From Oopsacas minuta (lineage: Eukaryota; Animalia; Porifera), in assembly GCA_024704765.1 (NCBI GenBank), contig JAKMXF010000323.1, positions 248,001 through 312,000 on the forward strand: DNA of 64,000 nucleotides. The letters are read 5' to 3'. The position numbers and the translations under genes are program-made. Below the pieces are notes generated by a model. That model searched no databases. It was given only the letters and a program-made list of their open reading frames with translations, and had not been told where the DNA came from. Within the stretch, counting starts at the first letter, position 1. Each line of letters begins with the position of its first letter. Below are positions 1-58,091 of the stretch, piece after piece.

Positions 1-217
1 AGGTATACTCAAATAATGTCACACATTATTAAGCAATTCTCACAAGAAAACGATATTTTAGCACCTTTTTCTGGCCTAAAATCACACATTTCCCGGTCGT
101 ATTTGGTTAATATATTTTGGTTAGTTGCATTTCTCTCTGATTTGTCTAGTTTGTGTAATTTGATTCCTTGTATGATCTTATATATATTTGAATAATATGA
201 ATTGTATAGCAATAATA

Positions 218-1443
218 ATGGCTACAGCTAATCCTATATTACCACAACCTGGAGAAGATAACTACGAGTTAGAAGTAAATCGAGTGAGAGAGAAGATTAA
301 AAGTACATTCTTAGAGTTAATCGACTGTCTAAAGGAAAGAGAGAGTAAATTGTTGAGAGAGTTAGATACAATTATGGATTGTTATCGCTCTTATAAAAGT
401 GAATTGACAAAGCTGAATGGAAAAAAGATTGCTCTAGAAAAATCCCAAAGTTTCCTACAACATGAGATACTCACTTCTCCTATAAAATGTGTTCATGAAG
501 ATTTGATTACTCGATTAGACACAGAACATGAATCAATTGAGTTTCCTAAACAACCTAGAATGGTTAGTTTCACTTGTGAAAACAACAAATTGTTAGATGA
601 AGTAAAGAAGTTGGGGAGGTTAGTGAGAAGCGGAATTGATTATACAAACAAGAAACAACCTCTAATGAGTGTTTGTGACAGAGGAACCGGAAATGAACAA
701 CTTAGCTTCCCACGGGATGTTACTGTGGATAACGAAACAGGAAATATTTGTGTAGCAGATACATGGAATGACTGTATTAAAGTATTTGATAGTACCGCTA
801 AGTATTTATTCAAATTCGGAGATCGTAGAGGTGAAGGAGTGATGAATTCTCCGAAATTTTTATCTATTTATGGAAATAGAGTTCTTATCTCTCAAGACCA
901 CTGTATCCTGAAATATACACTGGATGGAAAGTTCATTTCCAAAGTTGGTAAACAGGGAAATGGAGAACTTGAATTTGGCTATCTTTATGGTCTAACAATT
1001 GATGATTCAAATGAAGATATTTATATCTGTGACTGTTATAACAATCGTGTACAAATACTTACCAAAGACTTGTGCTACAAAACTAAATTCGGTACAAATA
1101 CACTCAAACGTCCTCTAAATGTGAAACTCTCTAAAGAATATATTTATGTGTTAGATACATCAAATCCTTGTATCCATCTCTTCAATCGTAACTTCATACT
1201 CCAGAAGAGCATTATTTCTCGAGGAAAAAGAAGGCAAGTGATATCTCCCTTGTTTTCTTTCTAGACATCTCTGACAATATTCTAATCTCAGATTATGGTT
1301 CTAATTCTATTTCTATTTTCAATTCTAAATATGAATGTATCCACACAATCTCTATTCCTGAACCAACAGGAATTACAGTAGATGATAAAGATAGAATTCT
1401 TGTTATGAGTCAAGCTGATGAGAATTGTCTACAGATATTCTAA
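218..1443 (+). pseudogene. Coiled-coil + NHL-repeat (TRIM-NHL-like beta-propeller) gene with a single 1-nt frameshift near 1250-1260
   Basis: ATG at 218 (MATANP...). NHL motifs PRDVTVD..GNICVAD, YGLTIDD..IYICD..NNRVQI. The ORF stops at 1264, but the shifted frame continues FLDISDNILISD...GITVDDKDRI...NCLQIF* (TAA 1441-1443), matching the paralog C-terminus. Versus the 33.1-kb paralog (atatctccctttttcttctttctagac) one base is missing. This could be an assembly error. Confidence 0.85.
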
Positions 1444-8784: not shown

Positions 8785-11700
8785 ATGGAAGTATTTTATG
8801 AAGAAATTGTAAAGTTTTTAAAAGTTGGAACATATCCTGAACCTGACGGAGTTTCCTCTGCAAAAAGATGGAATTTTAGAAGAAAAGTTTCACGATATTT
8901 TCTCGGTGAAGATAACAAACTTTACAAGGTAAAACCTCAATATTATTTATAATCTACAGTTGTGTTCGCCAAATAGCAAGTGGCACCTTGCTGAAAATTT
9001 GCTTGCAAATAGGCGAACACTACTGTATATAAATATTTATGTTATTGATGCAATATCATATGAACAATAAATTAGAAAGTGGACATCAATGGTTCAACAG
9101 TTGATTTGGAAGTCCCGTGTGAAACGGAAAGAAATGATATAATCAAAAAACATCATGATCAAGTTGGTCACCCTGGAATCAATGCCACTGTTGATTCCAT
9201 ACAGCAACAATATACATGGAAAGGCTTATATACACATATCATTGATTATGTAAGTAACTTACTTGAGTACAGTTCATTCTCAATATTTCCGAAATTGAAG
9301 GAATAATATTATTATTATTATTATGAATATTTTATTATTATTGAGAGTTTGATAAACTTGTATGCTTCCCTAAAAATCCTTTTTCTTAAATTCAGAGTAC
9401 ATAATTTGATATTCATTGAAAATTTAATATACTAGGTGGCTTCTTGTAAGATATGCCAAATGACAGCAACAATTCCAAAATCAACCAAGAAACTTCAACC
9501 CATTCAACCTCCTTCTAGAACATGGAAACACTTAGGCATGGACTTGATTTGTGACCTCCCTGTGAGTTCCGAAGGATTTAAGCATGTTCTTGTCACAGTT
9601 TGCTACTTAAGCAACTTCGTAGTTGTAAGACCCCTTAAGAGGAAAACTTCTGAAGAAGTTATTCAAAATCTTCAAGATATCTATGCTATAATGGGATTAC
9701 CGGATATTATTCAACATGACAAAGGCCCGGAGTTTACAATCAGTCTAAGTGATATTAGAACTTAATATATCTGAAATTGCTTAATTAATAAATATATTTT
9801 CTTTAGCTGTTTCAGGAATTCCATTGCAAACTACCCATTGACAACCGTAGTACTAGAGCTTGTCATCCTATGGCTAACGGTTTGGTAGAGGCACACAATA
9901 AGATCTTGAAAACGTAAGTTATAATTCCGCAGATTAGATCGGCAAGTTACTCAGTGTAATAAAGATATTGAATAACTATTACTTATTCATCTTAGGAAGT
10001 TAACAAAGATGGAAGTCCAGACAGGCAATCACTGGTCCCAATTACTCAAGCTCGCATGTCTCACTATGAATTCTACAAAGAAGAAGTCACATGGACAAAC
10101 TCCTTTTAATGTAATGTGGGGACGGGAGTCAAAACATGTGGATCTGTTGTCTACATATCCAAACCTGGCTATTGATCCTATAGAAGACTTTGAACATGAA
10201 GACGCTATATTTAGAGAAATTCTATTGCAGCAGCCAAAAAATGACTATATAGACGATCAAGAAGAATTTTCCCCGCCATGTTCTGAGCCAGGAGAAGAAT
10301 TAAGCTGTATCTATGAAACTCGAGACACACGATTCAAATCTGCTGCAGAACTCAGACAAAAACTGCAATATGATAAAAAGTCAATACCAATGGGTGAGCT
10401 TTCCTATAATTTCTTGATATTAGTGCTATATCTAACCCATTAAATTTAGGTCTTCAATAAAGATAGGTGATAGGGTCATTTACACAAACATGAGCAAATT
10501 AAAACGGTTGCCAAACACGAAAAATAAACCAAAATTTTTTGGACCTCACACAGTCTGTAAAGTCACTGAGAGCCACATTACTATTTGTGAAAATATCTCA
10601 GGAGCTAAGAAAAACAAAAACATACCAATTGACCTCGTTGGTTTGTATACAGAACGAAAAACCAAAATCCCTCAGACAAGCTAACCCAATGGAAATTAAT
10701 CACATTCCTTCCAAGGTATGCGAGTTTATTGTATAAATCCTGAAATTATCACAATTACTTACATACTTTAGATGTTGCAATGAAACTTTATGGATTTTCT
10801 AGAGAAAGAATACTTCATCACCTCAATAATCTCAAGGTTGGTACATTTGTATCAGTAGATCCTCACTAAATAATTAAAGAGTTCCGAATAGGTTTAGTAT
10901 GAAATATGAAAAAAATCAAGAGTAACCTGGCCTGGCGGATGCGGCCAGGCATTTGTTCTCCACTTGTATTGCCGCCATCGGACTTGTGTTTGAATATATT
11001 TTACCCATTTCTAATCTAACTTTAGATAGTTTTGAAACAAAATATTGAGCGACACACCTACATGACACCACTGCATGAGGAACTTCATAAAAATCTCAAG
11101 GTATTCCACACCTATACCTGCAATACTCTCCTGTTTGAATTCCTACTCGATTGTAAAGAATACGAAATAGTAAGTTTGATTTCTTGGTATTTGTATAATT
11201 ACACGAAGTTATAGTGTTTGCTCAAATCTATTGTTAGTGAAATACGCATAATAAATGATGTAACAATGACATATACACATTGTAGTTCTTTCTCTTGAAC
11301 ATTTGTATATGAATTCATTAGTATTCAGCAACAAGAGAAGTTTGATATATGTTTAGTGAAGAAATATACATATGATTGTCTTATCCCAATACAGCGATCC
11401 CAATACTATTTGTATTTTTTGAATACTTTTAATCTTGTAAATATGTATATTATTCACAATAGAGCGGAATCAAAATGAATGATTTTATTGAATTATAGAA
11501 GAGAGATATTACTGACACTTAACTCGATTGGACAACAGAGTTATATCCTCATTTTACAAACACCCAAGCTGCCAAATACACACACAAAGTAGTGTTCTTT
11601 CTAGTAAGTTGATCCAAATTTGCATTAGCATTGAGTATATACATCCATATTGTAATAGTTATAATGATAATCTGTTTAGGCAATGGAGTACTTAAATTTG

Positions 11701-12361: not shown

Positions 12362-12886
12362 AGAAAATACAATCAATTAGTCATTATTTTGTGCTGGTAT
12401 CAGGTGTTTTTGTGTGTTAGTAGAGTAATATCATAAATTACAAGATTGTATTCTAATCGTGTAATAACAAGTTAAATTTTGTTCATTACAGTATAACCCT
12501 CACTAATGTAAACGTCAGAAACCATCAAAATTCCTTTATCTTATCCAAAGTTTGTATTAACCATTGTGAAATCAGTTGGAAAGTATTGAAAGACCAAATT
12601 TTGGAAAATTACTTGCTTGCTTAACCAGGAGATTCGTATTGACCGTGTTTGTAATAATAATTAATGAGGTTTCACTGTATGTGTTGTCAAAAACAAGTAT
12701 ATTTTCAAGTCATGATTGAAATACGTAAATACTATTAATAAAAGAAAACCGCATGATGATAACTACATATTCTGTATATAGTTTCTCCCTCTGTTACCGT
12801 GCCTCAATATTCTACAGTAGATATTCATCCATGGTCTATGCATACAGTGCCTCAATATTCTACGTGCCTCACTAGTCTATGCAACA

Positions 12887-13764
12887 GGACTAGATCTTTA
12901 TTGAAAATGTGTAGACAAGGATTTGATTGACCCAGGATAAAAATATTGTTTCGATTAAGTTTGATATCACAAGGATTGTAGAGAATATCTTTACCAAACT
13001 GAGACTTGTAATGAAGATTTTCTGAGAGTATTTGAATGCGATTGTTATTATAATCACAAATGTAAACATCTCTATTTAATTCATCTATTGTTATACCTTG
13101 AGGATAATTAAACTCTAAATTTCCGTTTCCATCTTTACCAACTTTGGAAATAAACTTTCCATCTAGTTGATAGTTCATTATACAGTGACTGGATTGAGAA
13201 ATAAGAATTCTATTCCCACAAATAGTTAAACCTGTCGGCAGGCTCATCTTATTTTCACCTTTACTGTCTCCGAATTTGAATAGATACTTAGCAGTACTGT
13301 CAAACACTTTAACACAGTTATTCCATTGATCTGTATAATTGATTACTCCAGCTTTCTCCACCAACTTCCCCAACTTATTCACTTCATCTAACAGATTATT
13401 GTTATCAATCAACAAGTTAACCATTTTCGGTTTTACAGGAATTTCCAATAATTCAAACTCTCTATTCAATTCCTTTAAGAAGTTATCATGCAATGTCTTA
13501 ACAGTAGAATTAATTACCATTCCTGTATAAGCGTTTCTGATATTTCAATCTCTTTCTTCTTTCAGTTATCTTTTCAACTTCCATTTTATAAGTACAATAG
13601 CGAGCTAGAATATTCTCCAATTCTTCAATCAATGTATTCTCTCTCACGCTTAAACAGTCTCTCAATTCGACGAATTGAATTTGAATTCTCTCCTTTATTC
13701 GATGTATTTCTAGAATAAAGTTATCTTCTCCATGATCTGTATCTTCTCTATGAGCAGTAGCCAT
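12887..13764 (-). pseudogene. NHL-family pseudogene, 3'-truncated by the Ginger right TIR
   Basis: ATG at 13764 (MATAHRED...ILEIHRIKERI). Frameshift at ~13515. In-frame loss of ~45 aa between INYT and DQWNNCVKV. Homology ends at NKDLVL exactly at the TIR. Confidence 0.85.
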
Positions 13765-21437: not shown

Positions 21438-24280
21438 ATGGGCACCTGGAATGGATTCACTATTTGTTTTGTAATTTCAATTGTCAGTGCATATATCACT
21501 CTCAATGTAGAAACCGGCTTTGTAACTGAGTTTGATAGTAAATGGAATGACTGGAAATACGAGCAGAATAAGGAATACAAATCAAAAGAAGAGGAACTAG
21601 CTCGCAAGATTATCTTTATAGAAAATCTGCTTTACATAGACTCATTCAACAAAGAAGACCATTCATTTACGTTGGGTCTCAACCAATTTGCTGATCTAGT
21701 GAGTTAATTAAGTATTTCTAAAAATCTGGCCTATTAAATAAGCCCAAATACCGATACTATTAATACAGTAAAGTCTCATTTATACGAACACGGTTAAGAA
21801 CTAACTCCAGATAAGGAGTGCGAATTTTGGCAGTCCCCTGGTGTACGTATAACGAGAGGTTACTATACTATGTTTATTCTTATTATCACTGAGTATTAAT
21901 TAGTGTCCACTATGTAGACTAATTCTGAGTACAGAGAACAATACTTGAGTCCTATTAAAGATAGCGAACCTAGGTCAACCAATGGGACATTACAAATATT
22001 TGACTCGATAATTCCTAGTATTGACTGGAGGACTAAAGGCGCTGTCGGTGCGATAAAAAATCAGGTGAGTATGTTTATTATATAGAATGCAAGCCTAGAA
22101 ATATTGATAATTTACTGATTGGATGCTGCTTAAATATATAATTTAGTCATCAATTGTACTAAGCGTAAAATAAAAGCATAAGTTTGCCGGTTTTTCGGGG
22201 ACGAATTTTCAGTGCATAACAAAAAGGAGAATTGAAGATAGTGGTTAAATTCCAATAAATGGGATAAATGCATTAGAACCTGCCAAATTTTGGATTTTCT
22301 AGATTGGGTGCCAAATGCTATGGAGGAAGGATGTATTTCTAAGGCCACATCTAAATGACTCTGCCATTGTGGTTTTATGTCATGCCTGGCGAAATACACA
22401 GTGGAAAATCCCAAAGAGGGACAGCCTATAAACAGGTTGAATGTACGAATCTCATTCAACCGAAAGAGAATTGATAAATTGATAAACAAAATTTCAGATA
22501 AGAATAGCTTAATATGAAATTACCACTCAATTATTATATTCACGCGACGGAAATACCGCGAAGGGAATTAACGCTATTAATTAAAAATACTAAGATACAT
22601 GAATTAACGCAAGCAAATTCCCACACACTCACTCCCGCAAGGTACGCCCTTGGTGTCAATAAATACCCCCACACTATTCATTCGTATATATATATTATTT
22701 ATAGTATAACTGTAAATGTGGATGGGCTTTCAGCGCTACAGCTGCTCTGGAAGGTCAGAATGCGATCAAAACAGGTGGTTTTGAGGTTTTATCTGAACAG
22801 CAGCTACTTGATTGCTCACAAGGATATGGGAACAATGGGTGCTATGGAGGATCCGTTTATAATTCATATCGTTATTGGCAATATTACAGAGAAGAAAGAC
22901 AAAGTGCTTACCCATACGAAGCAAAAGTAAGTTTTTGAAGGAAGGTATATCAGTGTTATTTGTAGCTGCGCGACAGAATATACTCAACACTACGAGCCTC
23001 AAATTCTCGGAATAGTTAAATTTACTATCTTATTTTCAATTGGAACTTCCGAATTTGACTTTGAAATTCTGAGATATTGAATATCTTGTGTTTAACAACA
23101 AAATAAACATAATTCAGTAAAACCTGACTAAATATATGCATAGTAAATGAGGCGTTATTTTCATTAAAAATATTCTTCTATAGGGTGGTAATAAATTGTA
23201 TTCCCTTGTATTGGAGCATTTTTCTTGCCCCGGTGCTTATTCAGAGAAATACGGTAAACATCTGCATATTTAGTTTATTATCTTTGTGAATATAAAGTAA
23301 ACAATAATAAAATGTACTTAGGGATTTACTCTTAACTGTTAAAATGGGGTAACAAAGTATACTGAACCCGAATTTCGCACTTCCAAGGTAGTCATGTGTA
23401 AACAATTGTTGTTCTTATGGAAATATTCGAGGTACGAAGTGCAAAGTTAAATGCGAAACAGCTCGTTATCTCAAAATTTAAGTATAATTAAGGGTTAATT
23501 TTGACCCGGTTTATGAAATGACGATACATGAATGTAACTATATTAATTGCCTAAATGTTTTATCAAAAGAAGTAACATTGTTTAATTCGTAAACCATATT
23601 ACAACCATCTATGAAATTTTAAATAATTTAATATTCAGATCGCTAATCACGATGTCATAATTTGAATTGGGTCACATGAGACTAAGGGTGGCTCATTAGA
23701 AGCTATTTAGTGTTTTTAATGGATTATCATATCCGAAATCCCTAAGAAAGTACATCTACATTTTGGGCAAATACATTTTTTATAGGAAATTAACGCGATA
23801 GAGGGAAAATTTTTAAAAAGTGATCGTAAAAATATCCTTTTTGGCGCAAGATCGAAGATATCGATCATTATTATTAATTTACGATCGTGATCGAATGTTT
23901 AATTATTTTTTTTCTAGGTCGGAAGTTGTAGGTATGATCCCGGCAAAGGAATTGTAGATCCGATTAACTATTTTACATTCTTAAGTCGTGGTTGCTGTAC
24001 TTGTGTGATGTATGCCTTGTATTACAATGGACCTATTTCGGTTGGAATTGATGCATCACAACCATCCTTTCAATTCTACCGAGACGGATTATATACTGAC
24101 AATAATTGCAACAGGTATAACCTCAACCATGCAGTACTGATTAGCGCATACTACCAACCTGAGGACTACTATTGGGTGAAGAATAGCTACGGAAGTAGTT
24201 GGGGAATAGACGGAAACTTCAAGATTAAGCCTCTAACGAATATGTGTGGGATATGCCAACAAGGAAGCTATCCTGCTTAA
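21438..24280 (+). CDS. Cathepsin-L-like (papain C1A) protein, 330 aa, 4 exons, catalytic Cys replaced by Gly
   Basis: Exons 21438-21698, 21918-22064, 22705-22926, 23918-24280. All introns are phase 0 GT-AG and the frame is open. Signal peptide, I29 prodomain (W..WK..KEY..EEE.ARK..F.EN...LGLNQFADL), IDWRTKGAV..IKNQ, YNCKCGWAFS, SEQQLLDCS, GCYGG, NGPISVGID, LNHAV, WVKNSYG..WG..G, MCGI. Confidence 0.93.
21766..21865. mobile_element. pogo-type MITE in cathepsin intron 1 (related copy ~24905-25046)
   Basis: TA|CAGTAAAGTCTCATTTATACGAACAC...GTATAACGAGAGGTTACTA|TA. Shared atacgaacacggttaagaa and gataaggagt..aattttggcagt. Confidence 0.55.
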
Positions 24281-26408
24281 GTTGTGTATGTACGCTGTGT
24301 GAATAGTTAATGCATGTTGGTTAGATCTACTAGTGTGATAATTATTATTACTTTTGCTATAAGTTACTCCAGATAATTAAAGAATGAAATAGTATTTGCA
24401 CGTATAGCTTTAACTCGGAACAGTGTTCCTTCTAAGGACACCAGATCGCAGCCTCTTTCGGTGATCCATTCAATATATCTGCGATCTTCATTGTTTTTAC
24501 AAATATTCCGATTATTATGTTAGGATTATTTTAATGACTATTATGATTATTTGAAATTAATCCGTGAACTACGTAATATAACAATGACAGGAAACTACTA
24601 TATTTTTCATACTCACCAACCCCTTGTAACAGTTTCCCTGAATTGTTTTCTCAAAATCCCTGGAATTCTAATTTTACATTTAAATAATGTGACATTTTCC
24701 CTCGTTTATGTGGTAAAAATGCAAGAAATATCCAATAATCCTTCCGGATATAGCAATCTTCCCCAGATCATACGCCTTATCCCGAATAATCCAGGGATCT
24801 TCGAATGGTTGGCAAGTATGATTTTTGGACCAGGGATAAAGAAGAAGTCCACTGTCAATGATTCGAATTATATACATACGCATAACTCATATTATTAGAG
24901 ATTAAAGTAGAGTCTCGTTAATACGAACACGGTTAAGAAGTACAAATTTGTACTTTATCAGTCCCCTTCTATGTCTTTCAATGTAAATTAGTACGGATAA
25001 TACGTACTCCGGATAAGGAGTACAAATTTTGGCAGTGATGTAATGAATCACAATTTCCACATCTTGAAAATGTTTTTAGTTCGATAAAGACCTCATGTAA
25101 TCCCCTAATCTCTTAAAGGTATTGTAGCTAGGATACTCATTACCTTGCTCGTGGGTCTCATATCGTAAAGTAACTGAGACTCTGGTATATCATCAAACTA
25201 ACGTTTAGCTGCTAGTCTTTAGGAACTTAGGAACTCAATTTTACAATAAATAATAACTCATAAGTAACTAAAATTCACATACCAAAAATGGATGATTCAG
25301 AATAACAAGGTGATCTAAATTAAATCTATATTATTAACCAAGTTATTGTTCAAACGAATATTTTACCAAATTTCAAACAATTACAGATACATGAATTAAA
25401 TGGCAATTGTCATTGTGCAATCATTCTGTAATAAGGACTAAGATTAGTATGTAATATTATTAGATCACAGGTATACGAGACAGGCCTGGGGGAGCAAATT
25501 AAAAGTGCTCAGGAAAAATGCTGAGTATTCATAGCTGCCCCATAAAAATGTAGAGGACAAGCCAAAAAGTGGTCAGGCAATTAAGTTGATTAATGCTATG
25601 CTAAAAATTTCACACAAAAGCAGAATAATGAAGTAAGAGTGTGAAAATAGAAAAATTATATTTTGATTTGATTACACAAACACAATGATTATCAAAATCA
25701 TGTTACGTGAATAGAACTTGAAATCTTTGCAAATTTCTATGATAAATCACCGCACCGTGATAACAAGACACAAATATTTATTCAAACTTTCATATTGTCT
25801 ATGAACTGAGATAATGCTTTTACCCCTGAAATACCTCTGTACCCCCATTGCACCCCATCTTGCGATGCGCTAGCGCCGCCACTGCCCACCATAATAGTTC
25901 AATATTCTTCAATTCGTTATGAATTACTGTAATAACTTCAATTTCTCCAGAAAAATTAAAGTGTGAATCTCACATTGGATCAGTGAGACTTGACAACTAT
26001 GCCATAAGTTAATTGTTCTTGCCATGTTCTTGCTAAAGCCTAATCTAAGCATTTTGTCTGGAACACTGTGCAGGACCTTCCGACTGTCCAGATGCCAACT
26101 TTTACGCCTTACCCATGAGTCTGAGATGCCAACTTTTACGCCTTACCCATGAGTCTCACGCTTTTCAGAGATTAAAAAGTGAAATATCATGCTATTTTAT
26201 GATTCTCCGCTCTAACATTCGATGCTGGGATGCCAAATCTCACACCTTTGGAGAAGAAATCTTACGGGTTAGCATCTATGTGCATATAGTATATCACATT
26301 TCATGTAATCATTATGAACTAGGTAATATGCTCGAACCCATTCTATATGCTAGCAATCTAGTGTATTTTAACTAACTAAACACTTTAATTAATATCATAA
26401 GATACATA

Positions 26409-27650
26409 ATGGCAACTGCAAATTACGAGTTGATAGAAGAAAATGGAGATTACTTTGAATTAGAATTGGGTCGAGTGAAAGAGAAAATACATACAGCATT
26501 TAATCAGTTAATTTCTGACTTGAGAAAGAGAGAAAGTGAACTGTTGAAAGAATTGAATGAGATCCTAGCTTCCTATCACTCTTATAAAAGTGAACATAAG
26601 AAACTGAGCAAGATGAAAGGAAGATTGGAAAATATAAAATCATTTCATAATAAGGAGTTAACTTCTTCAGGCCATAATGCTTTGAGAAAACAAATCCAGA
26701 AAACCATCGACAACAAACTAGGATCGTTTAAAATGCTAACACGCCCACGGGTAGTTAGTTTTGAATGCGATAGAGATATGGTGTTAGAGGAAGCGATCAA
26801 GTTATTCAGGTTGGTAGATAAGTTGCCAAGTAGGGTTGATTACACCAGCAAGAATCAACCAGAATTGAGCATTTGTGATAGAGGAAACGGAATTGATCAA
26901 CTTTACTGGCCACATGGTGTTGCAGTTGATATCAAAACTGGGAATATTTATGTAGTGAATTTATGGAGCAACAGTGTGAAAGTATTCGATTCTACTGGTA
27001 GGTATCTATTCAAATTTGGAGATGGTAAGGGCGAAGGAAAAATGAATAAACCAAGATATATATCAATCTTTGAGGAAATAGTCCTTATATCTCAAAGTAA
27101 CAACTGCATACTCAATTATCGACTAGATGGGAAATATATTTCGAGATTTGGTGAGTATGGAGAAGGAAAAATGGAATTTAACGTTCCCTCTGGTCTGGCA
27201 TTTAATGAATTGAATGAAGACATTTACATATGTGATTACTCTAACGATCGTATACAGATAATTACAAAAGAATTCCTATTCAAATCTCAGTTTGGTAAAT
27301 GTACACTTAAACAACCTCGTGACGTTAAACTTTCTGAAGAATATATTTATGTTCTTGATTCATCAAACCCCTGTATTCATATCTTTGACCATAATCATAT
27401 ACTTCAAAGTAGTGGAATATCTCTAGGACCGGGAATGCAAGTGATTAATCCACTTTATTTTTGGCTAGATTGTTCAAACAATATTCTAATTTCTGATTAT
27501 CAATCAAATTTCGTTGTCATCTTCAATCCTCAATTCGATTATATGCACAAAATTCAAGTCTCCGCCTCTCCTATGGGAATCACACTAGACAGCCAAGACA
27601 GAATGATAGTAGTATGTCAGGCGGAAAACAACTGTTTACAGATATTTTGA
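26409..27650 (+). CDS. Intact intronless coiled-coil + NHL-repeat protein (413 aa), TRIM-NHL-like but without RING/B-box
   Basis: Open frame MATAN...NCLQIF*. Helical N-terminus. About six NHL repeats (PHGVAVD..GNIYV, PSGLAFNE..IYICDYSNDRIQI, PRDVKL, PMGITLDSQDRMIV). Confidence 0.92.
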   Translation: MATANYELIEENGDYFELELGRVKEKIHTAFNQLISDLRKRESELLKELNEILASYHSYKSEHKKLSKMKGRLENIKSFHNKELTSSGHNALRKQIQKTIDNKLGSFKMLTRPRVVSFECDRDMVLEEAIKLFRLVDKLPSRVDYTSKNQPELSICDRGNGIDQLYWPHGVAVDIKTGNIYVVNLWSNSVKVFDSTGRYLFKFGDGKGEGKMNKPRYISIFEEIVLISQSNNCILNYRLDGKYISRFGEYGEGKMEFNVPSGLAFNELNEDIYICDYSNDRIQIITKEFLFKSQFGKCTLKQPRDVKLSEEYIYVLDSSNPCIHIFDHNHILQSSGISLGPGMQVINPLYFWLDCSNNILISDYQSNFVVIFNPQFDYMHKIQVSASPMGITLDSQDRMIVVCQAENNCLQIF

Positions 27651-37230: not shown

Positions 37231-37992
37231 TTAGTCATAATTAGGATTGTATGGTGGGGGAAGTGGAATAGCGATCAGATTCTCAGATTCTTGTAAGGGA
37301 TCATATTCAACTTTAGGTTGGCTAAGATCACACATAGAAGAGGAGCGGATTGGAATTTGTTCAGGCTTGATATCTTCTTGACGTTCAATCGATTCAATCA
37401 CTCGCACTTTATCTATTAGTTGATTGGTTTTATCAAATGACTTTGGATTACAAAAATAGGATACAGGAATTTCCGGATAGGTAAGGTTGTGCCTTCTCTG
37501 ATTATTATGGCTACTAGGTATGCTTTCTGGTGGCGGTGATAAGACATTCAAGGAATGAATTCCATATCCGCATGGGCGATGGCAGTCAGAATTACTTGAT
37601 GGTGATATAGAAATTAATTGCTGTATAGAATTAGTATTTAAACGAATAGACTGAACCCATTGTAGACAATCTAGGTGAGAGAAAGCAAATGCAGCAAAAA
37701 TTGTTTGGGTCGCCATTCCATTAAAACGAATAGCAAAACCACGGAAAAATGGTATTTTAGGAGGCATGGGGTGACTTTCTTGTTCAGTAATAATTGGACT
37801 TGTAATTGCAATAGCCTTTGTCAAATCATAAATAAGTTTTGGAACTTTTCGCTTATATTTTTTCTTGTAAATAATAAGTGACGAGCAACTAAGAATAATC
37901 CATTTCTTTTTCCATTTATTGTCAATTGAAACATGGAGAATTCCTTCCTTACTTGTAAATTGAGGACTATAGTAGTTGGGACTTGATGCCAT
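37231..37992 (-). CDS. PH-domain protein with C-terminal PPxY motif (253 aa, single exon)
   Basis: ATG 37992. KEGILHV...KWKKKWIIL...LIIY...FAIRF...CLQWVQSIR is a PH fold signature. The low-complexity tail ends in PLPPPYNPNYD. Confidence 0.75.
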   Translation of the reverse strand: MASSPNYYSPQFTSKEGILHVSIDNKWKKKWIILSCSSLIIYKKKYKRKVPKLIYDLTKAIAITSPIITEQESHPMPPKIPFFRGFAIRFNGMATQTIFAAFAFSHLDCLQWVQSIRLNTNSIQQLISISPSSNSDCHRPCGYGIHSLNVLSPPPESIPSSHNNQRRHNLTYPEIPVSYFCNPKSFDKTNQLIDKVRVIESIERQEDIKPEQIPIRSSSMCDLSQPKVEYDPLQESENLIAIPLPPPYNPNYD

Positions 37993-38586
37993 TAATAATA
38001 CAAAACAGATCATAAAATATTGCGATATTATACGTATAAATAAGAACAAAAGTAAACTAGAAATACATATTACAACAAATAGAACTCGTGTTCTGGATTA
38101 TCATTGTTAGAAATACCACCGATATTTTGGGATTTCTTATTATTCTTTAGCTTATCTATGCTTTATAGAAAAAATTATATAGAATAAAAAAACATGTGAT
38201 TTCAAAAGTCTGAACAAGAATCTGTAAGAGTGGTAAATAGAATATTTGTCAATAGTTGATGGAAAACTGAAAAGATCCAAAGTATACAAATCTATAAATA
38301 ATTCCATAACTTGGTTTCACGGTTATTTTAGGGTAATGGAGTACACAGATTCCGAATTTCGCCCTTGAAAGTAATCATATGTATATGATAGTTGTTCTTA
38401 TAAAATTCGACGCATAAAGTGCCGAGTTACATCCACGGTGATCTCAGGCCACGCAGCGGGAGCAAGCGAAGCGGCTTGCATATCATTAGATTGTAGTTTT
38501 CATTTGTCTGTTTGTTCTTTGTAAAGGAAAGTAATTATGGTATGCTTTTTGAGTGTAGATTTCGCAATTCCGAGATGTGGTATAAC

Positions 38587-40882: not shown

Positions 40883-42016
40883 AATGACTCCTTGAATAGT
40901 AATTTGCCAATTTTCGCAACCTCACCGTTCGTCACTGAGGAGTTATAATGAATTGATATTCAAATGATAGAAACCTCCTAGACTAGTTATGATATCTTCC
41001 AAATGGCATCTTTCTACGTATACTGGTTGCATAATTATAACTTGTTAAAGTGTGCTCGATTTGTTTCGCTGCCAACTTCACACTCATCAGGTAAGAATAC
41101 GTAGGTTTTTGAGCTTGAACTTGCTTGTTACCTTAAGTGTCAGGGTTCAGCCTTTTTCATATCAATTTCTACTCGACTAGTATATAACGAAAAGACACTT
41201 ACCATAGCCAGGCGCAACACATCCATTTCAAAAGTGGTAAAGCGAAAGATTTCATAGTATTTAAAGTTGTACGACTATACCAGACCACTTAATTAATACA
41301 AAAAAGAACCGCGATTATTTATGCCTAACTGTTCCCGTATTTGTCTAAATAATTTACCTTTCAATAAGTGGTCAAAAGTGTCCGTTGCATCACGCATGGA
41401 TTTGCATGTTTCTTAACTAGCATTGTGTGAAAGAGCCCAAACATATCGGAGATCAGTTGGAAAGGTCGTGAGGCGACGCCTGACCACTCTGTAATTGGTT
41501 CGCAGTAGCTGTCGTGTGCCGCCCTTGTTGCCACCGTTTATTCATAGTTAAGAAATTGTTTCTTTCTAGTCATATTACTCATATATAATATACGGGAGAG
41601 CATTGGCGAAACTAGGCTCCCCATAGTGGGCGAAGATTACGTATTGCACACCCACGCTATATCTTTTGTACTATGGTGGAACTGAATCTGGGTGGGCCGA
41701 CGTCCACCCAAAATGGCTCTAGTTGTGCCTATGCCTCAGCCTGGGAGTAGGCAATGGTAAGTTGGGTGAGGCTATGGCCCTACCAATAATTCTGCTCTCT
41801 CCATAGAAGCTAATATAAAACTGTGTATGGCCCTACCAATATTGTCACCATGGCTCCAACAGCCCTCCAATCCATATCCCGAGTCTGTGCCTCCTGATAT
41901 ATTACACATTTCACACTTCAAAATATGCATATGATATAACATTTTCTTTTCATTTAGACTTATTTTCTCTTGAGTTGAAACTGTTCTTTTTTTATACTTT
42001 ATATTGATCATATTTG

Positions 42017-43525
42017 ATGACAACTCTTAACGATGATGACAATTGTGCTTCTGAGGAATTGATTCCCAAGTCAAATTCTCATTGCCCCAGTCGTCGTAAC
42101 ATCCATGACTGTGCTACTTTTGCTATTTTAATATTTATCAATGCTCTCAACTATACAGACCGTTGGACTGTAGCTGCTATCATCACCAATTTGGAAAATG
42201 CCACGACGAATGAGTTTGGATATGCAATCAGCGATTTAGAGGCAGGATTCTTAACAACCTCCTTTATCCTATCTTTCATGGTCTTTTCAATTCCATTCGG
42301 TGTGTTAGGAGATAGATACAAACGAACTTGGCTGATGGGAATTGGACTATTTATTTGGTCTGCTGCTACACTTGCTGCCTCTTTTGCCCCTACTTATTGG
42401 TTTCTCCTCCTAATGCGCACATTAGTGGGCATTGGCGAGGCTTCCTATGCTACAATTGCTCCCACAATCATAGCCGATATGTTCCCACCTAAGCTGAGGA
42501 TACGAATGCTTTCTCTATTTTATTTAGTTATACCGTTTGGTACTGCATTCGGATTTATTGTAGCAGCTGTAGCGCAGATTTTTGCTGAGCATGTGCTTAT
42601 GTTAACTACAGGACAGTGGAGGTGGGCTTTGCGTATTACTCCTCCTTTTGGATTCATTGCGGTGTTATTAATTATATTCGTAGCCAAAGAACCTCCGCGC
42701 GGACGATCTGAAGATGTTTTTAACAGTTCAGTTTCTTTCGTTGCTAAATCGAATTGTAAGAGTGTATTAATGGATATTGTTTCCGTCATCACAAATTATA
42801 GTTTCATTTTTTCCACCCTAGGATTTACTGGGGTAACTTTTTCAACAGGTGCGCTTGCACAATGGGCTCCTCGCTATACGACACTTATTTCTGATGCTTA
42901 CTTTGACTCAATAATATCTGCTAATACTTGTAGCATTTTCTTCGGTGTGGCTTCAGGAATTGGAGGTTTGACTGGTACTTTGTTCGGATCTGAATTGTCA
43001 AAGTTCATATCAAAATATTCAGGTCGAGCAGATATGTACGTTTGTGCGCTTGGTATGTTGTTGAGTGGGCCATTATTATATTTGACTCTTACTGTCACAG
43101 TCTATTCGATATGGTCTGGATTCCCACTCGTTTTACTTTGTGTATTTGTGCTGAGTTTTAATTGGGCGCCCAATGCGAACATTCTACTTTATGTAGTTGT
43201 TCCTCAAAGAAGATCCACTGCTGAGGCATTTCAAATTCTTATTTCACATATGTTAGGGGATGCAGCTAGCCCAACTATAGTCGGAGCGATCTCAGATTGG
43301 CTACGAGGGACTAATGAGATGGCAACAGTACGAGCTAGTGCATTACAAACCGCCCTTTATACTACATGCTTTATTGCTTGCATATCTGGATTTTTCTATT
43401 TATTTGGCAGCTTATACGTAAACAAGGATAAAGCTGCAGCTGACCAATGTAACTTTGAAAAAGTTAGGAAACAACGTCATGATGATTCTATTCGTGATTT
43501 ACCCAGCATCCCATCCAATTTGTAG
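42017..43525 (+). CDS. SPNS1: Spinster-family MFS transporter (502 aa, intronless)
   Basis: INALNYTDRWTVAAI, GVLGDRYKR, RTLVGIGEASYATIAPTIIADMF, WRWALRITP, RRSTAEAFQILISHMLGDAASP; about 12 hydrophobic segments. The symbol denotes the family; orthology is unproven. Confidence 0.93.
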   Translation: MTTLNDDDNCASEELIPKSNSHCPSRRNIHDCATFAILIFINALNYTDRWTVAAIITNLENATTNEFGYAISDLEAGFLTTSFILSFMVFSIPFGVLGDRYKRTWLMGIGLFIWSAATLAASFAPTYWFLLLMRTLVGIGEASYATIAPTIIADMFPPKLRIRMLSLFYLVIPFGTAFGFIVAAVAQIFAEHVLMLTTGQWRWALRITPPFGFIAVLLIIFVAKEPPRGRSEDVFNSSVSFVAKSNCKSVLMDIVSVITNYSFIFSTLGFTGVTFSTGALAQWAPRYTTLISDAYFDSIISANTCSIFFGVASGIGGLTGTLFGSELSKFISKYSGRADMYVCALGMLLSGPLLYLTLTVTVYSIWSGFPLVLLCVFVLSFNWAPNANILLYVVVPQRRSTAEAFQILISHMLGDAASPTIVGAISDWLRGTNEMATVRASALQTALYTTCFIACISGFFYLFGSLYVNKDKAAADQCNFEKVRKQRHDDSIRDLPSIPSNL

Positions 43526-49159: not shown

Positions 49160-49999
49160 TCAGAACATAAGAGAAGGCGACTTTTTAGATGAACTCAACT
49201 CAGCGCCAGATCCAGAAAATCCCATCCCACCTATCCTAAGTTTGATAATATCATTCTTTTCCAGAACATTCCCAGTGATTGGATGGGTCATCTCTCCAGT
49301 CTCCTTGATGCCAGATTTAATCAATTTCTCCACGCACTCTAATGTTACAACATCTCCTGTAGGGCGTAGAACTGCACAAGGTACTGAGTTACCAAGATTA
49401 TCCCCCGTAACTGAACACACAAATGTATTGGCTTCATCCGAAGATGCTTTAAAAGAAACTTTAACCAAATCTCTCAGAGAGAGAGGATTCCCACTCATAG
49501 GACAATAAATATTTTTATCGGGCTTAGAAATGTCATCTTGTACAACATCAGGAGTAAGCGTTGGTATCCAGAAACTCTTTAATCCTGTACTGAGATAATT
49601 TTTCGAACAAGTGGTGCGAGGGGCTGAGTTAGGGAGGATGCTATCTTCAGAACGCTTGAAATATAAAATTTCAGATTTTGAATTATTCTTCTCTTCTAAA
49701 GCTTTTTGCATAGAAATTTTCTTCATACGATTTTGATACACCTTTAATTTCTTGGAATATTCTTTTTTCTGATGAAAAATATATTCGAGTATGGCTTCCC
49801 TTTCGTAAAGAAAACCATTCGGTGTGATTACAGGGTTAATGCATGGTTGGAGAGTTAAACAGCAAGCATTAAATTTGTTCATTGAATCTTTAGACATCCG
49901 AATTTTCTGAAGGCCATATCCACCAGAAATACTGTCTTTCAGCCTTTCGTGATAAGTGTATACTGCACCTGCAGTACAATTTTTGCCATGGCGGCTCAT
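49160..49999 (-). CDS. NOSIP: Nitric oxide synthase-interacting protein (U-box/RING-like), 279 aa, intronless
   Basis: MSRHGKNCTAGAVYTYHER...GYG.QKIRMSKDS..F.ACCLTLQPC..PVITPNGFLYEREAILEYI; CPMSGNPL; CSVTGDNLGNSVPCAVLRPTGDVVTLECVEKLI; GG.GFSGSG. Confidence 0.96.
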   Translation of the reverse strand: MSRHGKNCTAGAVYTYHERLKDSISGGYGLQKIRMSKDSMNKFNACCLTLQPCINPVITPNGFLYEREAILEYIFHQKKEYSKKLKVYQNRMKKISMQKALEEKNNSKSEILYFKRSEDSILPNSAPRTTCSKNYLSTGLKSFWIPTLTPDVVQDDISKPDKNIYCPMSGNPLSLRDLVKVSFKASSDEANTFVCSVTGDNLGNSVPCAVLRPTGDVVTLECVEKLIKSGIKETGEMTHPITGNVLEKNDIIKLRIGGMGFSGSGAELSSSKKSPSLMF

Positions 50000-56014: not shown

Positions 56015-58091
56015 CAGTCAAACCTCCAATAGTGAACACCTCTCATTAGTGAACACCTCCAAATAGTGAACACTATATTCTGGTCCCAAATATTTCCCTA
56101 CCAAATAATATTTATAAGAACCTCTCTTTAATGAACACCTCTATACTGTGAATAGTGAACACCTTATTTGAACATTTCATAAGTATCTCAATTAGAATGA
56201 ACCTCCAATTAGTGAACATGGGTCAGGTTTCTGAATACAAAATAAACAGTGTTATATGAAAAGCGTGAAAAGATAATGTCACATATGCATATACTACTAA
56301 TAAGTTATCAATTGCCAACGTATAACGTACTAATACGTAGTTTAGAATTACTCTACCAACTCAGGTTATTTTAGCCATCTATCCGTGATGTCACTAAAAA
56401 GGAAAAATCTTACAATATCCGAAAAGCTCAATGTAATAGAATTTGCCTCAACGCACAGCCAGCGTGATGTAGCTGATCGATTTGGTATATCTGTGGGAGC
56501 CGTAAATAACATTCTTAAGAAGAAACAGGAAATCCAAATGGCTTGCGAAGAAAACTGTAACCCACAAATGAAGCGAGTTAGATTGTCTAGTCATTGTGAA
56601 GTTAATGATCTTATTTGGCAGTGGTTTGTAACAGCTAGATCAAAGAATATACCAATTTCAGGACCTATCTTACAAGCAAAGGGCATAGATTTTGCCGAAC
56701 AACTAGGTATACCATTCAAAGCCTCTAATGGCTGGTTGGAAAAGTTCAGGTCAAGGTACAATATAGCATTCAAGACACTATGCGGTGAAAGTGCCAGTGT
56801 TGATCCGGGGACTGTTGATACATGGAAGCAACAATTACATACGATAATAGGTGGTTACAGCCCTGAAGATATTTTCAATTGTGATGAAACAGGTCTCTAC
56901 TATAAGGTTTTGCCAACTAAGTCTCTTGTAGAGAAAAACAAAATTTGCAACGGAACAAAGACGTCAAAGGATAGGTTGACAATTCTTTTGTGTGCGAATA
57001 TGTCGGGTACGGAAAAATTGAAACTATTGATGATAGGGAAAAGTCAGAATCCTAGGTGCTTCAAACACATGGACTTTAGTCAAATGCCGGTGCAATGGAA
57101 AGCAAACAAAAAGGCTTGGATGGATAGTAGTATATTTGGAGAATGGTTGAAGGATATCAACAATAAAATGAAGCGACAAAAGAGAAAGATTCTTGTATTC
57201 ATTGATAATGCTACAAGTCATCCTCATTCAGTATTTAGTAATATTGAGTTAAAGTTTTTTCCTGCAAATTGTACATCCCAATTACAGCCAATGGATCAAA
57301 GAATTATACAGTCTATGAAACTTTCTTATAGGAAGATCCTCTTAATGGATGTACTAAGCAGAGTTGAATCTTGTGATTCTGGGCAAGGACTAATTAAATC
57401 GATCACAGTTAAGCATGCGTTGTATTGGGCAGCCCAAGCTTGGGAAAATGTCAAATCTGAAACTATTCAGAAATGTTTCGCAAATGCTGGATTTGGTTTC
57501 TATGAACACGCAAATCTTGACCATGAAGAAAATATCCAAAATATGATTGATGATTTGTCTTCCAGTCTTGGAATCGAATGTTGTTCAGGAATTAACTTCA
57601 TGAATATCGATGAAGAGGAACAATTACTGCATGCATATACTGATGATGATTGGGAAACACAGCTAATAGAAAATTATTTATCACCAGCAGACAATGAAAC
57701 ATTAGAATTGGATGAAGAAAGCGACTCAGATATTCCAATCTCAAAAGCTCCAACAGTAAAAGAAGTACTGTATTCATTGGATGTAATAAAGACATTCAGC
57801 AATAACGACAGTAAGGTGTTTGGAGCTGTAATGAAAGCTGAATCAGCAATCAAAGAGCTAATATCAGAAGGAACATGTCAAAGGCAGTCAAAACTTACTG
57901 ATTATTTGGAGAAAATTAATTAATAGCTAAAAACACATTAACATTGCATACTTAAATCATAATACATTTCATATAGCTTATTAAAATTTCATTGTTATAC
58001 TATTTCAATGTAACCTCTCATTAATGAACACCTCGCTATAATGAACAAAAAAATCGGTCCCGAGGGTGTTCACTATGGAGAGGTTTGACTG
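56015..58091 (+). mobile_element. Full-length pogo/Tigger DNA transposon (2077 bp)
   Basis: TA|CAGTCAAACCTC..ATAGTGAACACC...GGTGTTCACTATGGAGAGGTTTGACTG|TA. Subterminal TGAACACC repeats. Confidence 0.95.
56388..57923 (+). CDS. Tigger/CENP-B-family transposase, intact 511 aa
   Basis: KRKNLTISEK (CENP-B HTH), ISGPILQAKG, FKASNGWLEKFRSR, FNCDETGL, FIDNATSH, LQPMDQRII; open frame. Confidence 0.93.
   Translation: MSLKRKNLTISEKLNVIEFASTHSQRDVADRFGISVGAVNNILKKKQEIQMACEENCNPQMKRVRLSSHCEVNDLIWQWFVTARSKNIPISGPILQAKGIDFAEQLGIPFKASNGWLEKFRSRYNIAFKTLCGESASVDPGTVDTWKQQLHTIIGGYSPEDIFNCDETGLYYKVLPTKSLVEKNKICNGTKTSKDRLTILLCANMSGTEKLKLLMIGKSQNPRCFKHMDFSQMPVQWKANKKAWMDSSIFGEWLKDINNKMKRQKRKILVFIDNATSHPHSVFSNIELKFFPANCTSQLQPMDQRIIQSMKLSYRKILLMDVLSRVESCDSGQGLIKSITVKHALYWAAQAWENVKSETIQKCFANAGFGFYEHANLDHEENIQNMIDDLSSSLGIECCSGINFMNIDEEEQLLHAYTDDDWETQLIENYLSPADNETLELDEESDSDIPISKAPTVKEVLYSLDVIKTFSNNDSKVFGAVMKAESAIKELISEGTCQRQSKLTDYLEKIN

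What the first reader, a model, noticed from the sequence alone, without database searches (positions are those of the whole stretch)
22705..22731. Intact cathepsin-L-like gene with catalytic Cys25 replaced by Gly
The canonical Q-G-x-C-G-S-C-W-A-F reads Q-Y-N-C-K-C-G-W-A-F with unchanged spacing. The nucleophile position is GGA (Gly, two substitutions from a Cys codon) and a new Cys sits one residue upstream. Gln19, His159 (LNHAV) and Asn175 are kept, and Trp177 is Tyr (KNSYG). The signal peptide, prodomain and splice sites are intact, so it looks like a maintained, secreted pseudo-protease or a neofunctionalised enzyme. Precedents are sponge silicateins (Cys to Ser, silica deposition), testin/TINAG (Ser) and soybean P34 (Gly). 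If the host is a siliceous sponge, this could be a new cathepsin-derived matrix or biomineralisation protein (inference).
Basis: partly seen in the sequence, partly recalled or inferred. Interest (0 to 1): 0.82.

Follow-up and report, generated by a model that had tools for sequence, protein, structure and literature searches.

The report
Glass-sponge cathepsin L, shifted active-site cysteine
An expressed and conserved cathepsin-L gene of the glass sponge Oopsacas minuta has glycine where the cutting cysteine should be and a new cysteine one residue earlier; relatives share this arrangement, a planarian evolved it independently, and whether the protein still works as an enzyme is untested.

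Summary
Window 21438-24280 (+) holds a four-exon gene. Its product is identical to the 330-aa GenBank protein 'Cathepsin L [Oopsacas minuta]' (P0267). The active site reads Q|Y-N-C-K-C-G-W-A-F, so canonical Cys25 is Gly (GGA, 22720-22722) and Ser24 is Cys. Gln19, His159 and Asn175 are kept, and Trp177 is Tyr.

Contigs of three DNA runs and spliced transcript-like contigs of a fourth run carry the same codons. All four runs come from one sample.

Two tandem genes in another assembly read C-G-C-G-W and C-A-C-G-W. They are 55-63% identical to the window gene, with saturated silent sites against pN of about 0.25. A fourth relative is cut off before the motif. The four form a 99%-supported clade inside glass-sponge cathepsins L, with a long stem and ordinary tips.

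Dugesia japonica 'cathepsin L1' has C-N-C-G-Y. A mixture-model tree places it elsewhere, so the arrangement looks convergent.

The gene is therefore maintained, not decaying. I cannot decide between a dead cleft-binding protease and an enzyme that now uses Cys24. Nothing links it to silica.

The scan had noted a different cathepsin-like pseudoprotease elsewhere in this genome, but not this gene. The variant appears undescribed in the papers I could search.

The parts
21438..21698 (+). Exon 1: start codon, hydrophobic N-terminal signal-like stretch, and I29 propeptide with ERFNIN and GNFD motifs (87 codons)
   Evidence: Pfam I29 1.2e-15. GT donor at 21699. Spliced contig of run X4 joins 21698>21918.
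21918..22064 (+). Exon 2: end of the propeptide and start of the mature domain. It ends ...AIKNQ; Gln19 is at 22062-22064.
   Evidence: X4 joint 22062>22703, which fits equally with the cut 2 places further right, i.e. 22064>22705.
22705..22926 (+). Exon 3: active-site helix and most of the L domain (74 codons). It starts YNCKCGWAFSAT.
   Evidence: Peptidase_C1 8e-19; ungapped alignment to the CGSCW of cathepsins L.
22705..22731 (+). The reported motif Y-N-C-K-C-G-W-A-F
   Evidence: Zero differences in contigs of 4 runs.
22717..22719 (+). TGT, the new Cys at the Ser24 position (Cys141 of P0267). It is invariant in the three sponge genes where the motif is visible and in the planarian protein.
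22720..22722 (+). GGA, Gly at the position of the canonical nucleophile Cys25 (Gly142 of P0267)
   Evidence: In the AF2 model the central helix starts at residue 142.
23918..24280 (+). Exon 4: the rest of the mature domain, with His159 (24128-24130), Asn175 (24182-24184), Tyr in place of Trp177 (24188-24190), the extra Cys of 'CGIC', and the TAA stop
   Evidence: (Peptidase_C1 7.5e-22). X4 joint 22926>23918.

Best explanation
This is a lineage-specific paralogue of glass-sponge cathepsin L. It arose inside the hexactinellid cathepsin-L clade, changed rapidly once, and has since been kept under purifying selection.

It is made as a normal pre-pro-enzyme with a signal-like N-terminus and an I29 propeptide, and it is predicted to fold like procathepsin L. 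Its canonical nucleophile is gone: Gly occupies the first turn of the active-site helix.

My best reading is that it no longer works as a conventional papain-type protease. I think it acts as a non-cutting or barely cutting protein that uses the preserved cleft to bind peptides or partner proteins. Without its own nucleophile it would need other cathepsins to remove its propeptide.

The invariant neighbouring Cys24 would then serve a structural, redox or metal-binding role.

Shown here: gene structure, expression, conservation and fold prediction. Inferred: loss of protease activity and binding as the function.
For: - Gly at the nucleophile slot is confirmed in DNA contigs and in spliced transcript-like contigs.
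- The ungapped PDB alignment puts Gly on Cys25. One of the best PDB matches (2o6x, Fasciola procathepsin L1) reads CGSGW in that alignment. From my own knowledge, not checked here, that is an engineered inactive Cys-to-Gly mutant.
- AF2 model: pLDDT 93.7. The helix starts at Gly142 and Cys141 sits in the preceding position of Ser24. The top fold matches are procathepsins L/K/H with TM 0.84-0.91.
- The branch leading to the family is long (0.46) and the tips are ordinary at 0.28-0.51, against a median of 0.27. This is the usual pattern after a change of function.
- Cleft-forming elements are loosened. Gly23 is K/G/A in the three genes, and one paralogue (L002a) has lost the G-C-x-G-G loop together with Cys65.
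- Purifying selection: pN 0.21-0.30 against pS 0.5-0.87, and dN/dS of 0.30 between the tandem pair.
- Prior from established knowledge: most C1A homologues that lost Cys25 (SERA5, testin, P34) are non-peptidases that still keep His and Asn.
Against: - Cys24 is invariant in all three sponge genes where the motif is visible. Silent sites are saturated, and Ser is one mutation away.
- The same Ser24Cys + Cys25Gly pair arose independently in a planarian.
- Gln19, His159, Asn175 and an aromatic residue at 177 are kept in all four sponge genes, and in the planarian protein, where 177 is still Trp. Together with the two points above this fits a working thiol centre at least as well as a dead one.
- No binding partner is known.
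- No activity data exist.
Confidence: 0.45

Rival explanations
1. Relocated nucleophile. The thiol has moved one residue upstream to Cys24. Gly25 gives the room and backbone freedom for it to reach His159. The protein would then still be a thiol enzyme (a peptidase or other hydrolase/transferase) with a reshaped S1/S1' region.
For: - C-x-C-G-[WY]-A-F is invariant in three sponge genes that are only 55-63% identical.
- It recurs in Dugesia japonica cathepsin L1. With a mixture model and the motif columns removed, that protein falls outside the 100%-supported glass-sponge clade that holds P0267.
- Gln19, His159 and Asn175 are kept in every one of these proteins.
- 'C-C' intermediates (Cys24 + Cys25) exist in 6 of 225 motifs surveyed, so a viable path Ser-Cys > Cys-Cys > Cys-Gly exists.
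- Cys at position 24 is rare (about 3.5% of the motifs), yet 2 of the Gly25 proteins seen have it.
- L002a carries a one-residue insertion that restores the canonical Gln-to-thiol spacing of 6.
Against: - The AF2 model keeps the canonical backbone with Cys141 before the helix rather than at its first turn. AF2 follows the alignment, and I could not get coordinates.
- A one-residue shift of a nucleophile normally wrecks catalysis.
- I know of no precedent in family C1.
- The sample is small: three sponge genes and one planarian sequence.
Confidence: 0.33
2. Biosilica or matrix protein, in the manner of silicatein. The altered cathepsin would sit in or on hexactinellid spicules and template or catalyse silica deposition.
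For: - The host is a glass sponge.
- The genome paper leaves open that the many cathepsin L genes might act in spiculogenesis (PMC10280926).
- Cathepsins are upregulated in the growing osculum of Aphrocallistes (PMC10282587).
- The mature domain is unusually rich in Tyr: 11.4% against 5.7-7.1% in paralogues.
Against: - There is no Ser nucleophile.
- It is not nearer to silicatein than to cathepsin L.
- Silica-associated proteins isolated from hexactinellids are hexaxilin, perisilin and glassin, not cathepsins (PMC10772126).
- The same motif occurs in a planarian, which makes no silica.
- No expression or proteomic link was found.
Confidence: 0.08
3. Redox or metal centre. The new C-x-C pair (Cys22, Cys24), with His159 nearby, forms a redox-active disulfide or a metal site. 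This would turn the protease scaffold to another chemistry.
For: - C-x-C is invariant in the family.
- In L002a the usual disulfide partner of Cys22 (Cys65) is deleted, leaving Cys22 and Cys24 as the only unpaired cysteines if the other pairs hold.
- L002a reads C-G-C, a motif known from redox proteins (my own knowledge, not tested here).
Against: - This is inference from the sequence only.
- In the window protein and in L002b, Cys65 is present, so Cys22 is probably in its normal disulfide.
- No structural support is available.
Confidence: 0.1
4. Artefact or decaying gene. The Gly codon would be an assembly or sequencing error, an individual's null allele, or the first step of pseudogenisation.
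For: All reads come from a single sample.
Against: - DNA and transcript-like contigs from four libraries agree.
- The reading frame and all splice sites are intact.
- The motif is shared by two genes of another organism.
- pN is far below pS.
Confidence: 0.02

Closest known systems
Canonical cathepsin L of glass sponges (Oopsacas minuta paralogues P0275, P0020, P0262, P0283, P0292, P0295; Pheronema raphanus cathepsin L 1 and 2)
   Same: - Same pre-pro-mature layout, with ERFNIN/GNFD propeptide.
- Same intron positions in related assemblies (L004-L006).
- Same three canonical disulfide cysteines and the extra Cys in 'CGIC'.
- Nested in their clade with 100% SH-aLRT support.
   Different: - All of them read C-G-S-C-W; this one reads C-K-C-G-W.
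- Only 38-44% identity.
- Terminal branch about 4-7 times the median.
- Trp177 is Tyr or Phe, Gly23 is lost, and the mature domain is Tyr-rich.
Dugesia japonica 'cathepsin L1' (AWM96388.1, P0030)
   Same: Same arrangement Q-x-x-C-x-C-G-aromatic-A-F, with His and Asn kept.
   Different: - It is placed with bilaterian sequences once the motif columns are dropped and a mixture model is used, so the origin is independent.
- It has Tyr26 instead of Trp26, keeps Trp177 and lacks the CGIC cysteine.
- I found no activity data for it.
Silicatein alpha (demosponges; PDB 6zq3)
   Same: A cathepsin-L-derived sponge protein with the nucleophile Cys replaced and His and Asn kept. Same fold: TM 0.96 by the target.
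   Different: - Silicatein has Ser, not Gly, at position 25 and has no Cys24.
- Identity is 38%, lower than to cathepsins L/V at 41-42%.
- Silicatein is a demosponge clade that is reported absent from hexactinellids.
Other C1A homologues with Gly at position 25 (Vanessa atalanta XP_047531292.1 CVSGW; Antedon mediterranea XP_071956332.1 CQSGW; soybean P34, from my own knowledge)
   Same: Cys25 replaced by Gly in an otherwise intact cathepsin-L-like protein.
   Different: They keep Ser24, so there is no neighbouring thiol. They are unrelated lineages.
Engineered Cys25Gly procathepsin L1 of Fasciola hepatica (PDB 2o6x)
   Same: It reads C-G-S-G-W in the alignment. It is among the best sequence and fold matches.
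   Different: It is a laboratory mutant made to block auto-activation (my own knowledge, not checked here). It has Ser24, not Cys.

Membership tests
Peptidase family C1A, cathepsin-L-like (ERFNIN) subfamily | I29 propeptide with ERFNIN and GNFD motifs | tested here: met
   Pfam PF08246, 1.2e-15. E-x3-R-x3-F-x2-N-x3-I-x3-N and G-x-N-x-F-x-D can be read in the exon 1 translation.
Peptidase family C1A, cathepsin-L-like (ERFNIN) subfamily | Peptidase_C1 domain and papain fold | tested here: met
   PF00112 on exons 3 and 4. AF2 model pLDDT 93.7. Foldseek best matches are procathepsin L 1cs8/1cjl, TM 0.84-0.91.
Peptidase family C1A, cathepsin-L-like (ERFNIN) subfamily | Catalytic Cys25 at the start of the central helix | tested here: not met
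   Gly (GGA, 22720-22722). The alignment to CGSCW is ungapped. The helix starts at Gly142 in the model.
Peptidase family C1A, cathepsin-L-like (ERFNIN) subfamily | His159, Asn175 and Gln19 | tested here: met
   LNHAV, KNSYG and KNQ align to the catalytic positions. They are invariant in A1 and A4.
Peptidase family C1A, cathepsin-L-like (ERFNIN) subfamily | Peptidase activity | not testable with these tools
   Needs recombinant protein and substrate or probe assays.
Silicatein | Ser at the nucleophile position | tested here: not met
   Gly, not Ser.
Silicatein | Closer to silicateins than to cathepsins L | tested here: not met
   - Foldseek identity is 38% to 6zq3 against 41-42% to cathepsins L/V.
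- The exon 3 phmmer E-value to silicatein alpha is weaker than to cathepsins L.
- No silicatein sequence was in my trees, so this is by pairwise scores only.
Silicatein | Located in the axial filament; promotes silica polycondensation | not testable with these tools
   No proteomic or biochemical data are available for this protein.
Non-peptidase (pseudoprotease) homologues of C1A | Canonical nucleophile replaced while fold and gene stay intact under selection | tested here: met
Non-peptidase (pseudoprotease) homologues of C1A | No catalytic activity | not testable with these tools
   The adjacent conserved Cys24 leaves this open.

The most novel reading that the evidence does not exclude
The catalytic thiol of a papain-fold enzyme has hopped one residue upstream (Ser24Cys plus Cys25Gly) and still works with the old His/Asn/Gln machinery. 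This solution would have been reached independently in glass sponges and in planarians. It would be a natural example of active-site residue migration in family C1, with an altered S1/S1' geometry and probably a new specificity or chemistry.
Probability: 0.3. Interest if true: 0.8.

Novelty: new variant of a known kind. Interest (0 to 1): 0.55.

Why it matters
Papain-family proteins that lost their nucleophile are common. Here the loss comes with a strictly conserved cysteine next door, and the same pair of changes appears in two very distant animal lineages.

If Cys24 is catalytic, this would be a rare natural case of a nucleophile moving along the chain. That would interest enzymologists, and it matters for annotation, because such proteins are currently filed as plain 'cathepsin L'.

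If the protein is dead, it adds a conserved pseudoprotease to the small set of glass-sponge-specific secreted proteins. It also removes one of the '13 cathepsin L genes' of Oopsacas minuta from the list of presumed active proteases.

Either way, it does not by itself revive the idea of silicatein-like enzymes in glass sponges.

Tried and rejected
1. Paralogues in the window: tblastn with each exon found none.

2. Word search with exon 4 alone found only two exon-sized fragments, P0001 and P0002. The same search with a four-sequence profile added no further family member.

3. The exhaustive profile search of 1.84 billion representatives gave 17,048 hits. Only the fragment P0001 scored above 180 bits, and no full-length C-x-C-G protein stood in the top 150 except the planarian P0030. 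P0267 itself was not among the 150.

4. The scan of JGI metagenome contigs with the profile gave one unrelated C1 peptidase, L003.

5. Extra cysteines. The co-occurrence test of the helix Cys with Cys212 looked strong in the first sample: 10 both, 188 neither, 3 discordant. However, four O. minuta paralogues have Cys212 alone. I therefore do not claim that pair as a disulfide, or Cys24 as the only free thiol.

6. The LG+G4 tree joined P0267 with the planarian protein at 96%. I rejected this as long-branch attraction after the leave-one-out trees and the mixture-model tree without the motif columns.

7. Literature. Searches for a described Cys-Gly or shifted-Cys cathepsin in sponges or planarians, for the role of Ser24, and for the P34 precedent gave nothing usable. 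The O. minuta genome paper and its supplements list the gene only as a cathepsin L hit.

8. No RNA run is on record for this stretch. Expression rests on the spliced contigs of run X4, whose library type is not recorded.

Full report
**What is in the sequence.** Reading 21500-25000 and translating the open stretches gives a four-exon gene on the + strand. All introns are in phase 0 with GT..AG ends.
- Exon 1, 21438-21698: 87 codons.
- Exon 2, 21918-22064: 49 codons, ending ...AIKNQ.
- Exon 3, 22705-22926: 74 codons, starting YNCKCGWAFSAT.
- Exon 4, 23918-24280: 120 codons plus TAA.

Pfam places the I29 cathepsin propeptide on exon 1 (1.2e-15) and Peptidase_C1 on exons 3 and 4 (8e-19, 7.5e-22). 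The ERFNIN and GNFD propeptide motifs are intact. GGA is at 22720-22722 and the new Cys is at 22717-22719. The Gln of the motif lies across the intron at 22062-22064.

**Residue mapping.** phmmer against PDB chains aligns exon 3 without gaps to C22-G23-S24-C25-W26 of cathepsins L. One of the two best matches is Fasciola procathepsin L1 (2o6x), which reads CGSGW in that alignment. Exon 4 aligns His159 to LNHAV, Asn175 to KNSYG and Trp177 to Tyr.

**Reads and expression.** Only four runs hold the stretch, all from one sample and one study.
- Contigs of X1-X3 are colinear with the genome and show no difference over the motif.
- The only variant in the gene region is G>T at 23670, in intron 3.
- Run X4 behaves like RNA. 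Its contigs skip exactly the three predicted introns at depths of 410-640, while intronic contigs stand at 4-9.
- One 350-nt X4 contig spans the exon 2/3 joint and all of exon 3 with zero differences.

So the Gly codon is in spliced transcripts. The caveat is that there is one individual or sample, and the library type of X4 is not on record.

**Identity of gene and organism.** Instead I aligned a full-length database cathepsin (P0020) with the exon translations as separate rows by reference (A3) and ran the word search with that alignment.
- It returned P0267, 330 aa, named 'Cathepsin L [Oopsacas minuta]' by NCBI and UniRef.
- Each exon translation matches consecutive stretches of P0267, covering all 330 residues.
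- This confirms the gene model.
- It also independently confirms what earlier notes of this scan said about the genome: it is the glass sponge Oopsacas minuta.

The gene is thus one of the '13 cathepsin L genes' of the genome paper (PMC10280926). Neither the text nor the supplements comment on its active site.

**Relatives.** The word search with exon 4 found two exon-sized fragments. I fetched their loci.
- L002 (ENA ERZ25072740) carries two tandem genes with the same four-exon layout. Their active sites read Q|G-L-Y-C-G-C-G-W-A-F and Q|G-K-C-A-C-G-W-A-F.
- L001 (ERZ25069837) has the same exon 4, but its contig ends inside exon 3, so its motif is not visible.
- Identity to the window gene is 55-63%.
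- Silent sites are saturated (pS about 0.8) while pN is 0.24-0.27. Between the tandem pair, dN/dS is 0.30.
- L002 also has NHL-like ORFs between its two cathepsin genes, as the window has NHL genes on both sides. L001 shares a repeat with the window. This fits relatives of O. minuta, but I could not name these organisms.

The profile search of 1.84 billion representatives, the profile word search and a JGI metagenome scan found no other member. In public data the family is therefore small.

**Phylogeny.**
- On exon 4 alone, the window gene, L001 and the two L002 genes form a clade with 99% SH-aLRT. The stem is 0.46 and the tips are 0.28-0.51, against a median of 0.27. This is a burst of change at the origin of the family, followed by ordinary rates.
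- With full-length proteins, LG+C20 and the motif columns removed, P0267 is sister to O. minuta P0275 (89%). Both sit inside an 11-sequence clade (100%) of O. minuta and Pheronema cathepsins L, all of which read CGSCW.
- Canonical relatives in three further ENA assemblies share the intron positions and also read CGSCW.

**A second, independent origin.** One more hit turned up: Dugesia japonica 'cathepsin L1' (AWM96388.1) reads Q-L-N-C-N-C-G-Y-A-F with His and Asn kept.
- Under LG+G4 it joins P0267 with 96% support, flagged as long branches meeting.
- With either sequence left out the other goes elsewhere.
- With the mixture model and no motif columns, the planarian protein sits among bilaterian sequences.

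I therefore read the C-x-C-G arrangement as convergent.

In the census of 225 motifs, positions 24/25 are:

| Positions 24/25 | Count |
|---|---|
| S-C | 194 |
| A-C | 8 |
| C-C | 6 |
| S-S | 4 |
| A-S | 3 |
| G-C | 3 |
| S-G | 2 |
| C-G | 2 |

The regex also counted three singletons (D-C, S-D, S-A). The C-C forms show that Cys24 is tolerated beside Cys25 and offer a stepwise path. Gly25 with Ser24 also exists, in Vanessa and Antedon.

**Structure.** AlphaFold2 on P0267 with a 65-sequence alignment gives pLDDT 93.7 and pTM 0.88. The central helix is DSSP 142-159. Gly142 therefore takes the slot of Cys25, and Cys141 the pre-helix slot of Ser24. Foldseek's best matches are procathepsins L, K and H (TM 0.84-0.91). 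Silicatein alpha is at 38% identity, below cathepsins L/V at 41-42%.

**Interpretation.** Firmly shown: the gene is real, spliced, expressed, conserved and under purifying selection. It is not an artefact or a pseudogene. Two readings remain close.

1. Pseudoprotease, 0.45.
   - The canonical nucleophile is gone.
   - The Cys25Gly change is used in the laboratory to kill such enzymes (my own knowledge).
   - The family underwent a burst of change.
   - Gly23 and, in one paralogue, the G-C-x-G-G loop are lost.
   - Most such homologues are inactive although they keep His and Asn.

2. Relocated nucleophile, about 0.33.
   - Cys24 is invariant at saturating divergence although Ser is one step away.
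   - The same double change arose twice.
   - The rest of the catalytic machinery is untouched.
   - One paralogue even restores the Gln-to-thiol spacing by an insertion.

A redox or metal role for the C-x-C pair is possible (about 0.1).

A role in silica formation has no support beyond the host being a glass sponge (about 0.08). Current work assigns hexactinellid silica to hexaxilin, perisilin and glassin (PMC10772126). The motif also recurs in an animal without silica.

**Novelty and score.** The gene is in GenBank as a plain cathepsin L. I found no paper that mentions its active site or the C-x-C-G variant. It is a new variant of a known kind, namely a C1A homologue with an altered nucleophile. 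Interest is moderate (0.55). It would be high if Cys24 proves catalytic.

I did not build joined exon proteins for the window gene or for the L002 genes. Consequently there is no full-length tree or fold for the L002 genes.

Noticed in passing
P0030 (not in the window): Dugesia japonica 'cathepsin L1' (AWM96388.1) carries the same arrangement Q-L-N-C-N-C-G-Y-A-F, with His and Asn kept. It appears to be an independent origin. I did not check whether other planarians share it.
   Followed up: partly
window 188-1264 (+), 12852-13520 (-), 26409-27650 (+); L002 6633-7427 and 7921-8748 (-): Intronless coiled-coil plus NHL-propeller genes flank the cathepsin gene in the window. NHL-like ORFs also lie between the two tandem cathepsin genes of L002. 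This may be microsynteny, or just the abundance of this expanded family.
   Followed up: partly
window 21764-21850 (intron 1), 22952-23048 and 23243-23339 (intron 3), 24900-24945: Read depth jumps 10- to 100-fold, and many loose ends pile up at 21764-21850. A similar '...aatacgaacacggttaagaa...' stretch recurs just downstream of the gene at about 24915. This looks like a short high-copy repeat, perhaps the end of a mobile element.
   Followed up: no
P0267 mature domain (window exons 2-4): Tyr makes up 11.4% of the mature domain, against 5.7-7.1% in six O. minuta paralogues. There are also three extra window-specific cysteines in 'RGCCTCV'. Unexplained.
   Followed up: no
window 56385-57923 (+): A 512-aa ORF with DDE_1 endonuclease and Tc5 HTH domains: a pogo/Tc5-type transposase.
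   Followed up: no
window 42014-43525 (+), 49160-49999 (-), 37231-38049 (-): Single-exon ORFs for an MFS transporter, a NOSIP-type zinc-finger/RING protein and a PH-domain protein.
   Followed up: no
P0306 (not in the window): A protein labelled 'C1 family peptidase [Salmonella sp. s51228]' sits next to Pheronema cathepsin L 1 inside the glass-sponge clade. It is probably a mislabelled eukaryotic sequence in a bacterial record.
   Followed up: no
P0029, P0034 (not in the window): Cathepsin-L-like proteins of the butterfly Vanessa atalanta (CVSGW) and the crinoid Antedon mediterranea (CQSGW) also have Gly at the nucleophile position but keep Ser24.
   Followed up: no
L001 2429-2618 vs window 8955-9035: 83-94% nucleotide identity between a stretch downstream of the L001 cathepsin gene and the region of the window that another note calls a Ginger1 transposon. 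This points to a repeat family shared between the two organisms.
   Followed up: no
window 23670: G>T difference in the contigs of three of the four runs, in intron 3. It is the only variant seen across the gene.
   Followed up: no
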